A DNA stretch of 63,320 bases from Octopus bimaculoides (taxonomy: Eukaryota), in NCBI RefSeq assembly GCF_001194135.2, contig NC_068984.1:107902946-107966265 (forward strand), written 5' to 3'. The translations under genes were made by a program, and so were the position numbers. Of the stretch, positions 39,382-39,428 are shown piece after piece. Under the pieces are notes generated by a model. It was given only the letters and a program-made list of their open reading frames with translations. It was not told the origin of the DNA and made no database searches. Numbering within the stretch: the stretch's first letter is position 1; each line of letters opens with the position of its first letter.

Positions 39382-39428
39382 GCAGTACCTGATGATGGCT
39401 AACTAAGCCGAAACTTCAAAGTCACTGT
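39382..39428 (+). ncRNA. Minimal type-I hammerhead ribozyme (Penelope-like-element type), sense strand of intron 7
   Basis: GCAGT-ac-CTGATGA-T-GGCT-aacta-AGCC-GAA-ACTT-ca-AAGT-C|ACTGT: complete core, 4-bp stem II, quasi-palindromic stem III, GUC triplet, 5-bp stem I with one G-U pair. Confidence 0.7.

What the first reader, a model, noticed from the sequence alone, without database searches (positions are those of the whole stretch)
39382..39428. Apparently intact self-cleaving hammerhead ribozyme in the sense strand of the intron preceding the ShK2 exon
Seen: stem I GCAGT/ACTGT, core CUGAUGA, stem II GGCU-aacua-AGCC, GAAA, stem III ACUU-ca-AAGU and a GUC triplet (cleavage after 39423). There is a 2-nt insertion before C3 and an extra U after A9. 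Established: Penelope-like retroelements carry minimal type-I hammerheads whose short palindromic stem III favours dimer cleavage, and an extra nucleotide after A9 is tolerated (CChMVd viroid ribozyme). Inference: if active, it cuts this gene's pre-mRNA ~700 nt before exon H and could influence ShK2 inclusion or 3'-end choice. A retroelement ribozyme positioned over a skippable toxin-fold exon is the most unusual element here. A lone copy may be weakly active, since the 2-nt stem III loop implies a need for dimerisation.
Basis: partly seen in the sequence, partly recalled or inferred. Interest (0 to 1): 0.75.

Follow-up and report, generated by a model that had tools for sequence, protein, structure and literature searches.

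The report
Lone retroelement-type hammerhead motif in intron
The hammerhead-ribozyme-like sequence is really there and is most likely a stray copy of the minimal hammerhead carried by Penelope-like retroelements, but its first helix is two bases out of register, it stands alone, and nothing shows that it cuts this gene's RNA, so it is probably ordinary transposon debris.

Summary
The motif at 39382-39428 (+) reads exactly as described. It has all 11 core bases, A15.1-U16.1 and C17 (cut after 39423), and helices of 5, 4 and 4 bp.

It is more than chance. Shuffles give 0.0007-0.003 such motifs per window. The 29-nt stretch 39388-39416 matches all 24 fixed positions of the search pattern in nine eukaryotic metagenome contigs. 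Those contigs carry clear minimal hammerheads with helix I covariation. The pattern is absent from 596 Gb of prokaryote genomes.

The extra U after A9, G10.1-C11.1 and C15.2-G16.2 are published hallmarks of Penelope-like-element (PLE) hammerheads. A second such motif lies at ~24522-24570 (-).

"Intact and active" is not supported. In the relatives helix I abuts C3 (C2.1-G1.1). Here 1.1 is A, and helix I forms only by bulging 2 nt. There is no second copy in the window for dimer cleavage. No PLE ORF and no tandem repeat were found. Published PLE min-HHRs show no or low cleavage as monomers.

RNA reads and orthologous introns could not be obtained, so any effect on the ShK2 exon (40126-40245) is untested.

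Verdict: a solitary, probably crippled PLE-type hammerhead relic, a new member of a known kind and of low interest.

The parts
39382..39386 (+). Helix I, 5' strand (GCAGU)
   Evidence: Pairs with 39424-39428 as G.U, C-G, A-U, G-C, U-A.
39387..39388 (+). Two unpaired bases (AC) between helix I and C3. C39388 aligns with the conserved C2.1 of the bona fide relatives.
   Evidence: In the relatives C2.1 pairs with G1.1 directly next to C3. Here 1.1 (39424) is A, so the canonical register has no helix I (direct reading).
39389..39395 (+). Core C3 U4 G5 A6 U7 G8 A9 (CUGAUGA)
   Evidence: Identical in all nine metagenome relatives.
39396..39396 (+). Unpaired U between A9 and G10.1, a hallmark of PLE min-HHRs
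   Evidence: The same U is in all relatives. The hallmark is stated in PMC4209133.
39397..39409 (+). Helix II hairpin GGCU-AACUA-AGCC, with a G10.1-C11.1 closing pair
   Evidence: The relatives have GGCUC-NNN-GAGCC.
39410..39412 (+). Core G12 A13 A14
39413..39422 (+). Helix III ACUU-CA-AAGU (A15.1-U16.1, C15.2-G16.2, two U-A pairs). In practice 3 bp plus a UCAA loop.
   Evidence: The relatives have only AC-NN-GU.
39423..39424 (+). C17 and the predicted scissile bond (between 39423 and 39424)
   Evidence: Position follows from hammerhead numbering applied. Cleavage was not tested.
39424..39428 (+). Helix I, 3' strand (ACUGU)
39348..39443 (+). Competing 96-nt imperfect hairpin. Its 5' arm (about 39348-39377) pairs with helix III, the cleavage site and the helix I 3' strand.
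   Evidence: MFE -25.1 kcal/mol, z = -2.19, with 5 of 200 shuffles as stable. The minus strand is not stable.
40126..40245 (+). Context: ShK-like exon ('ShK2'), 120 nt, AG acceptor and GTAAGT donor
   Evidence: Pfam ShK 17.5 bits over the full profile, cut-off 20.9.
24522..24570 (-). Related: second min-HHR-like motif GAGUCG|CUGAAGA|G|GUCACAG-AAU-UUGUGAC|GAAA|G-AU-U|UU|UGACA
   Evidence: Zero hits in 2984 shuffles for its descriptor.

Best explanation
The motif is a solitary copy of the minimal type-I hammerhead carried by Penelope-like retroelements and their non-autonomous derivatives. It lies in sense orientation in an intron. It keeps the whole catalytic core and the family's hallmark features. 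Its helix I is shifted by two bases relative to well-formed relatives, and it has no partner copy for the dimeric mode by which such ribozymes cleave. The most likely outcome is that it is transcribed as part of the intron, cleaves not at all or only marginally, and has no role in handling the ShK exon. In short, it is transposon debris, one of several such relics in this window.

Shown: the motif, its similarity to bona fide hammerheads, its hallmark features, the shifted helix I, and the absence of a second copy, tandem repeat or PLE ORF.

Inferred: descent from a retroelement, and lack of meaningful activity.
For: 1. The full core and three helices are present. Chance expectation is 0.0007-0.003 per window.

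2. 39388-39416 matches all 24 fixed positions of the search pattern in nine eukaryote-derived metagenome contigs. Those contigs read helix I(6-8 bp)-CUGAUGA-U-GGCUC-NNN-GAGCC-GAAA-C-NN-G-U-H-helix I. In them 90.5% of cells pair, and two helix I pairs change on both sides. One contig has two copies head-to-head plus a decayed third copy. One contig carries a pogo-like DDE_1 transposase. The pattern is absent from viral contigs and from 596 Gb of prokaryote genomes.

3. Published hallmarks of PLE min-HHRs are met: a nucleotide between 9 and 10.1, G10.1-C11.1, C15.2-G16.2, and a helix I of 4-5 bp (PMC4209133).

4. A second motif with the same hallmarks lies at ~24522-24570 (-). Its descriptor gave 0 hits in 2984 shuffles. 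The half-descriptor (core plus helix II) finds 2 against 0.15 expected, p = 0.012. The loose descriptor finds 4 hits at 3 loci against 0.23 hits expected. Scattered hammerhead relics therefore seem common in this genome, as reported for metazoans in general.

5. Against activity: helix I is out of register with the relatives. There is no other copy in the window and no tandem array.

6. Literature against activity: single min-HHRs are inactive and dimers are weak. An intact PLE hammerhead needs the element's protein, and no RNA-seq ends were found at its cut site. In Xenopus about 43% of retrozyme-related copies lie in introns, so intronic copies are commonplace.
Against: - No copy, consensus or PLE could be examined in the source genome, so descent from a retroelement rests on similarity to hammerheads of other animals and on hallmark features.
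- The covariance-model score (29.9 bits, E = 1.7e-6) is largely circular, because the model's sequences were fetched with a pattern taken from this motif.
- No RT or GIY-YIG remnant was found in 2.8 kb upstream or 0.5 kb downstream.
- Helix II is 4 bp, against 6-8 bp in the published min-HHRs.
- Inactivity is inferred, not shown. Insertions of 1-2 nt next to CUGAnGA do occur in known hammerhead alignments.
- Helix III here is longer than in the relatives, which would help a monomer.
- The nearest-neighbour penalty for the hammerhead fold (+5.4 kcal/mol isolated, +10 to +11 in context) is no worse than for the bona fide relatives (+7.7 to +14.2).
Confidence: 0.7

Rival explanations
1. Chance look-alike. 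AT-rich intron sequence happens to contain CUGAUGA, GAAA and GUC with short complementary stretches, and has no ancestry in any ribozyme.
For: - No Rfam hammerhead family matches, at gathering score on the whole window or at E <= 10 on 311 nt around the site.
- The motif needs 3 extra nucleotides to fit.
- It lies in apparently unique sequence, with no other copy in the window and no PLE ORF.
- At 0.0007-0.003 per 58 kb, a genome of a few Gb would hold tens to about a hundred chance instances.
- A review notes that early relaxed-descriptor hits were mostly false positives (PMC6155905).
Against: - The Rfam negative carries little weight, because the bona fide metagenome relatives are also missed at E <= 1.
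- A chance motif would not be expected to share the extra U, the GGCU/AGCC helix II, C2.1 and C15.2-UU with real hammerheads in other animals. The same pattern gives 0 hits in 596 Gb of prokaryote DNA.
- A second hallmark-bearing motif lies in the same window.
Confidence: 0.17
2. Active intronic ribozyme. The motif self-cleaves the pre-mRNA after 39423, alone or paired with another transcript, and so affects inclusion of the ShK2 exon or 3'-end choice.
For: - All catalytic residues are present in sense orientation 703 nt upstream of a 120-nt, frame-neutral exon.
- Helix III (3-4 bp) is more stable than in min-HHR relatives. In isolation the hammerhead fold is penalised less (+5.4 kcal/mol) than in the relatives (+7.7 to +10.7).
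- Conserved intronic hammerheads exist in amniotes (RECK, CTCL, DTNB; PMC6155905).
- Insertions of 1-2 nt next to the core occur in natural alignments.
Against: - Helix I is out of register relative to well-formed relatives.
- Helix I is open, so the loop 1-loop 2 tertiary contact that gives activity at physiological Mg2+ (PMC4209133, PMC6155905) has no loop 1 to form on.
- There is no second copy for dimer formation.
- A 96-nt hairpin sequesters the 3' half.
- PLE min-HHRs are inactive as monomers. An intact one needs the element's protein and leaves no RNA-seq ends.
- Retrozyme copies are depleted from introns in frogs, suggesting selection against active genic copies.
- No expression, RNA-end or conservation data could be obtained.
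Confidence: 0.05
3. The functional unit, if any, is the 96-nt imperfect hairpin 39348-39443 (for example a small-RNA precursor or a structured intron element), and the hammerhead resemblance is incidental to it.
For: The + strand folds at -25.1 kcal/mol with z = -2.19, and only 5 of 200 shuffles are as stable. The effect is strand-specific.
Against: - The z-score is modest, and it vanishes in a 151-nt context (z = -0.52).
- No Rfam family matches convincingly.
- It does not explain the hallmark-level match to real hammerheads.
Confidence: 0.03

Closest known systems
Minimal hammerhead ribozymes (min-HHRs) of Penelope-like elements (Cervera & de la Pena 2014, PMC4209133; Lunse, Weinberg & Breaker 2017, not held in the library)
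   Same: - Type-I topology and a full CUGANGA/GAAA/UH core.
- An unpaired nucleotide between A9 and G10.1.
- G10.1-C11.1 and C15.2-G16.2 pairs.
- A short helix I (5 bp).
- Occurrence as a solitary copy away from any PLE ORF, as for most genomic copies.
- The 29-nt core plus helix II stretch matches all 24 fixed pattern positions in the min-HHR-like motifs of nine eukaryotic metagenome contigs.
   Different: - Helix I is separated from C3 by two unpaired bases.
- Helix II is 4 bp, not 6-8.
- Helix III is 3-4 bp with a non-palindromic centre (CA), instead of 1-2 bp with a palindromic loop.
- No pLTR, RT or GIY-YIG context was found.
- No family consensus from the source genome could be examined.
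Canonical metazoan type-I hammerheads of non-LTR retrozymes (Schistosoma Sm-alpha, newt satellite 2, mussel, coral and axolotl repeats; PMC7229834)
   Same: Type-I topology, a 4-bp helix II, a short helix III, low-GC surroundings and retroelement origin.
   Different: - Those sit in tandem repeats of about 170-400 bp, one ribozyme per unit. No tandem unit carries this motif.
- By published description, most have a closed helix I with loop 1-loop 2 tertiary contacts and no extra base after A9.
Conserved intronic hammerheads of amniotes (HH9/HH10: RECK, CTCL, DTNB introns; PMC6155905)
   Same: A sense-strand type-I hammerhead inside an intron of a protein-coding gene, thought to derive from retroelement ribozymes.
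   Different: Those are ultraconserved across orders, have tertiary contacts and reach Rfam thresholds. Here conservation is untested, there is no loop-loop contact, and no Rfam hit.

Membership tests
Hammerhead ribozyme (any type) | Conserved core: C3 U4 G5 A6 N7 G8 A9, G12 A13 A14, A15.1-U16.1, H17 | tested here: met
   All are present at 39389-39395, 39410-39413, 39422 and 39423.
Hammerhead ribozyme (any type) | Three helices meeting the core in the canonical register, with helix I abutting C3 and position 1.1 following H17 | tested here: inconclusive
   Helices II and III are in register. Helix I forms only with a 2-nt bulge (39387-39388), and the canonical register gives 0 bp. [quoted passage not shown]
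Hammerhead ribozyme (any type) | Match to the curated covariance models (Rfam Hammerhead_1, Hammerhead_3, Hammerhead_II, HH9, HH10) | tested here: not met
   No hammerhead family matches at gathering score or at E <= 10 on 311 nt. The control shows this test is weak here: the bona fide metagenome min-HHRs are also missed at E <= 1.
Hammerhead ribozyme (any type) | Site-specific self-cleavage 3' of H17 giving 2',3'-cyclic phosphate and 5'-OH ends | not testable with these tools
   This needs a bench assay or RNA-end mapping.
PLE-type minimal hammerhead (min-HHR) | [quoted passage not shown] | tested here: met
   U39396. The hallmark is stated in PMC4209133, and the same U is in all nine relatives.
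PLE-type minimal hammerhead (min-HHR) | Conserved G10.1-C11.1 pair | tested here: met
   G39397-C39409.
PLE-type minimal hammerhead (min-HHR) | Palindromic 15.2-16.2 (C-G), and palindromic loop 3 where present, allowing a dimeric helix III | tested here: inconclusive
   C39414-G39421 is met. ACUUCAAAGU is self-complementary except for the central CA, so a dimer would carry two C.A mismatches (direct reading; cofold).
PLE-type minimal hammerhead (min-HHR) | Short helix I (4-5 bp) and long helix II (6-8 bp) | tested here: inconclusive
   Helix I is 5 bp but bulged. Helix II is 4 bp. The relatives found here have a 5-bp helix II. The second window motif has 7 bp.
PLE-type minimal hammerhead (min-HHR) | Membership of a genome-wide consensus family with covariation | not testable with these tools
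Protein searches found no same-species sequences, and the best LINE hit was 47% identical. There is no other copy in the window. Covariation was shown only for the metagenome relatives.
PLE-type minimal hammerhead (min-HHR) | Location in the pseudo-LTR of a PLE, with an RT plus GIY-YIG ORF adjacent | tested here: not met
   There are no long ORFs. Pfam gave no hit at E <= 1 in the three + frames of 36000-39700 with the SINE removed. The literature states that most genomic copies are solitary, so this does not exclude the origin.
Non-LTR retrozyme | Tandem repeats of about 170-400 bp, each carrying one type-I hammerhead | tested here: not met
   No repeat of the motif-bearing unit was found. 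TRF finds only microsatellites downstream.
Domesticated intronic hammerhead (HH9/HH10-like) | Conservation of the ribozyme in orthologous introns across distant species | not testable with these tools
   No orthologous locus was retrievable.

The most novel reading that the evidence does not exclude
The motif is a domesticated hammerhead variant that tolerates a 2-nt bulge at the helix I/C3 junction. It cleaves the nascent pre-mRNA about 700 nt upstream of a frame-neutral ShK-like exon and so tunes inclusion of that exon or premature 3'-end formation. That would be the first ribozyme-controlled alternative exon reported in a mollusc.
Probability: 0.03. Interest if true: 0.75.

Novelty: new member of a known kind. 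Interest (0 to 1): 0.25.

Why it matters
If the best explanation holds, the finding adds one data point. Penelope-type minimal hammerhead relics are scattered in this (reportedly octopod) genome, including introns, as already described for many metazoans.

It also gives two practical lessons. Rfam's hammerhead models miss this minimal class, for the window motif and for clear-cut relatives alike. And the extra base after A9 marks the class rather than being a flaw.

Only the unlikely active reading would matter more. A ribozyme cutting a pre-mRNA just upstream of a skippable toxin-fold exon would be a new mode of exon control, and it would show that a 2-nt junction bulge is compatible with hammerhead catalysis.

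Tried and rejected
I did not try to get round this.

2. Orthologous or paralogous loci through proteins. Searches with the ShK2 and ShK1 exon peptides found nothing. A LINE ORF from the window found only hits of 47% identity or less. The source organism is therefore not in the protein collection, and conservation could not be tested.

3. Rfam at gathering score and at E <= 10 found no hammerhead. I then showed that the same models miss the bona fide relatives, so I do not use this as evidence against.

4. Nearest-neighbour energetics. The hammerhead fold is disfavoured by 5-11 kcal/mol. The control on real relatives gives +7.7 to +14.2, so the argument does not discriminate and I dropped it as evidence against membership.

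5. PLE context. Pfam found nothing in + frames of about 3.3 kb around the motif. ORFs downstream of the hammerheads in the metagenome loci show no RT or GIY-YIG either.

6. Second copy or tandem unit. The blastn self-search and TRF found none.

7. Flank similarity to the metagenome loci. There is none beyond the 29-nt core.

8. Covariance model R1 built from the nine relatives. The window motif scores 29.9 bits, but this is circular. The model preferred the second GUC (39427-39429), and in that register helix I has only 1 bp. I rejected that register.

9. A whole-window repeat finder was swamped by N runs and microsatellites and gave nothing useful.

Full report
**1. The observation**

The sequence at 39382-39428 (+) reads GCAGU|AC|CUGAUGA|U|GGCU-AACUA-AGCC|GAAA|CUU-CA-AAG|UC|ACUGU. 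With hammerhead numbering:
- C3-A9 is 39389-39395.
- G12 A13 A14 is 39410-39412.
- A15.1-U16.1 is 39413-39422.
- C17 is 39423.

The helices are I = 5 bp (one G.U), II = 4 bp and III = 4 bp around a 2-nt loop, realistically 3 bp plus a UCAA loop. Two bases (AC, 39387-39388) separate helix I from C3, and one U (39396) follows A9.

The ShK-like exon is 40126-40245. It has an AG acceptor and a GTAAGT donor, is 120 nt long (so frame-neutral), and starts 703 nt downstream. Its Pfam ShK match scores 17.5 bits over the full profile. A first ShK exon lies at 25051-25173 on the same strand. The motif is therefore on the sense strand.

**2. Is it more than chance?**

I wrote a descriptor scan and ran 2876 dinucleotide-preserving shuffles of the window, both strands. 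Expected hits per window were:
- 0.0003 for a canonical motif with these stem lengths.
- 0.0028 if 0-2-nt insertions are allowed at any junction.

The motif is thus unlikely by chance in this window. A genome of a few Gb would still hold tens to about a hundred chance instances.

The stronger evidence came from elsewhere. I took the pattern CCTGATGATGGCTNNNNNAGCCGAAACTT (24 specified bases) from 39388-39416. It hit nine JGI metagenome contigs. It hit nothing in viral contigs or in 596 Gb of bacterial and archaeal genomes.

All nine hits are well-formed minimal hammerheads: helix I (6-8 bp) directly abutting C3, CUGAUGA, an unpaired U, GGCUC-NNN-GAGCC, GAAA, C-NN-G, U, H17, then the helix I 3' strand. 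They fall into three flank families. In them 90.5% of cells pair, against 22-48% when partners are slid, and two helix I pairs change on both sides. One contig has two copies head-to-head around a palindrome plus a decayed third copy. One contig carries a pogo-like DDE_1 transposase, and other contigs carry LINE-like and SINE-like ORF fragments. They are therefore eukaryotic repeats, but the organism was not determined.

**3. What kind of hammerhead?**

Cervera and de la Pena (PMC4209133) describe the minimal hammerheads of Penelope-like elements (PLEs). Features that emerged beyond their descriptor include:
- a highly conserved G10.1-C11.1 pair;
- palindromic 15.2-16.2;
- a short helix I (4-5 bp) and a long helix II.

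The copies are mostly scattered as single elements, thousands per genome. It is in fact a class marker.

A second motif with the same marks lies on the minus strand at ~24522-24570: GAGUCG|CUGAAGA|G|GUCACAG-AAU-UUGUGAC|GAAA|G-AU-U|UU|UGACA. It has a 7-bp helix II and an in-register 4-bp helix I. Its descriptor gave 0 hits in 2984 shuffles. The half-descriptor (core plus helix II) finds these two motifs against 0.15 expected, p = 0.012. A third, weaker candidate is at 17485-17577 (-). Scattered hammerhead relics therefore appear to be a feature of this genome, and the finding is not a unique oddity.

**4. Controls that changed my reading**

Rfam finds no hammerhead at the site, at gathering score or at E <= 10 on 311 nt. 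It also misses the clear-cut metagenome relatives at E <= 1 and the second window motif. The negative is therefore uninformative for this minimal class.

The nearest-neighbour model penalises the monomeric hammerhead fold by +5.4 kcal/mol in isolation and by +10 to +11 in native context. A 96-nt hairpin (39348-39443, -25.1 kcal/mol, z = -2.2) sequesters the 3' half. The same calculation on the relatives gives +7.7 to +14.2. This does not set the window motif apart. It only agrees with the published poor monomer activity of the class.

The covariance model built from the nine relatives scores the window motif at 29.9 bits. That is circular, since those sequences were fetched with a window-derived pattern.

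**5. Is it intact?**

In every relative the base before C3 is C2.1 paired with G1.1, followed by G-C pairs. The window keeps C2.1 (39388), but 1.1 (39424) is A, and the canonical register gives no helix I. The 5-bp helix exists only if AC is bulged.

[quoted passage not shown] The bulge is thus at the edge of natural variation, and its effect on catalysis is unknown. A 2-nt loss after C17 or a 2-nt gain before C3 would explain it. That is inference only.

Other points against an intact, working element:
- Helix I is open, so there is no loop 1 for a tertiary contact.
- No second copy lies in the 63 kb for a dimer.
- The motif is not in a tandem unit.
- No RT or GIY-YIG remnant was found nearby.
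- No similarity to the relatives extends beyond the 29 nt.

**6. Likely behaviour**

Published tests argue against activity:
- A single PLE min-HHR showed no detectable cleavage, and dimers or trimers cleaved only weakly, mostly at non-physiological Mg2+.
- An intact Anolis PLE hammerhead did not cleave without the element's protein, and no RNA-seq reads ended at its cut site (PMC11167929).
- In Xenopus about 43% of retrozyme-related copies lie in introns but are depleted there relative to intergenic DNA (bioRxiv 10.64898/2026.07.22.740005). That fits selection against active genic copies.

I therefore take the motif to be a solitary, probably crippled relic that is transcribed with the intron and does nothing for the gene (confidence about 0.7). 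The rivals and their confidences are:
- chance look-alike, about 0.17;
- active intronic ribozyme, about 0.05;
- the hairpin as the real unit, about 0.03.

**7. What could not be done**

Orthologous introns and same-genome copies were out of reach because the protein collection holds nothing from this organism. The claims about cleavage and ShK2 inclusion therefore remain untested rather than refuted.

**8. Novelty**

Precedents exist for every element of the finding:
- PLE min-HHRs (PMC4209133).
- Retrozymes in molluscs (PMC7229834).
- Intronic hammerheads in amniotes (PMC6155905).

A full-text search for 'hammerhead ribozyme' with 'octopus' returned only tangential papers. Hammerhead relics in an octopod genome may thus be undescribed, but they are expected. 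I rate this as a new member of a known kind, with interest 0.25.

Noticed in passing
window 24522-24570 (-): A second min-HHR-like motif: GAGUCG|CUGAAGA|G|GUCACAG-AAU-UUGUGAC|GAAA|G-AU-U|UU|UGACA. It has an in-register 4-bp helix I, an unpaired G after A9, G10.1-C11.1, a 7-bp helix II and a minimal helix III. Its descriptor gave 0 hits in 2984 shuffles. It lies about 480 nt upstream of the ShK1 exon but antisense to it. Rfam has no hit.
   Followed up: partly
window 17485-17577 (-): A third, weaker hammerhead-like hit: UUUAA|CUGAGGA|AGGU...45 nt...ACCU|GAAA|CGUACG|UA|UUAAA. Its helix III is fully palindromic (ACGUACGU), but it has A10.1-U11.1 and no extra base. The loose descriptor gives p of about 0.045. 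Rfam has no hit.
   Followed up: partly
window 38775-39163 (+), copies at 27052-27436 (+) and 55363-55559 (-): A tRNA-derived SINE of about 389 bp, flanked by an 11-bp target-site duplication AATAGATAATG (38764-38774 and 39164-39174). It sits 218 nt upstream of the motif and does not contain it. Two further copies in the window are 94% and 88% identical. ARAGORN calls no tRNA there.
   Followed up: partly
window 39348-39443 (+): A strand-specific 96-nt imperfect hairpin (-25.1 kcal/mol, z = -2.19). Its arms enclose the 5' half of the hammerhead motif and pair with its 3' half.
   Followed up: partly
window 39466-39530 and 39688-39750 (+): A unit of about 60 nt (gtgacctttca.tttgatgttaaaat...tatatagcctcatataaaccatttat) occurs twice, each time followed by TA/TG microsatellite blocks. 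The first copy is partly complementary to 39411-39428.
   Followed up: no
window 25051-25173 (+) and 8226-8522, 15302-15457 (+): The ShK1 exon is preceded in the same ORF by a cysteine-rich stretch (…NSCCPQVQC). Further cysteine-rich ORF pieces upstream suggest a multi-domain secreted protein. Neither ShK exon peptide has any relative sharing 5-residue words in the 5.8-billion-protein collection.
   Followed up: partly
window 45658-46750 (-), 11509-12375 (-), 5503-5757 (+), 31093-31386 (-), 19084-19401 (-), 16003-16167 (+), 62502-62696 (+): ORF pieces that look like LINE reverse-transcriptase C-terminal fragments and mariner/Tc1-like transposase fragments. This is my reading of the translations, not a domain search. 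The best database relatives of one LINE piece are only 47% identical.
   Followed up: no
L001 280-330 (-), 362-439, 445-495 (+), 1456-1507 (-): In one metagenome contig two hammerheads face each other across a near-perfect 78-nt palindrome. This is the head-to-head arrangement described for PLE insertions (PMC8557442). A decayed third copy has G12 changed to U and a broken helix II.
   Followed up: partly
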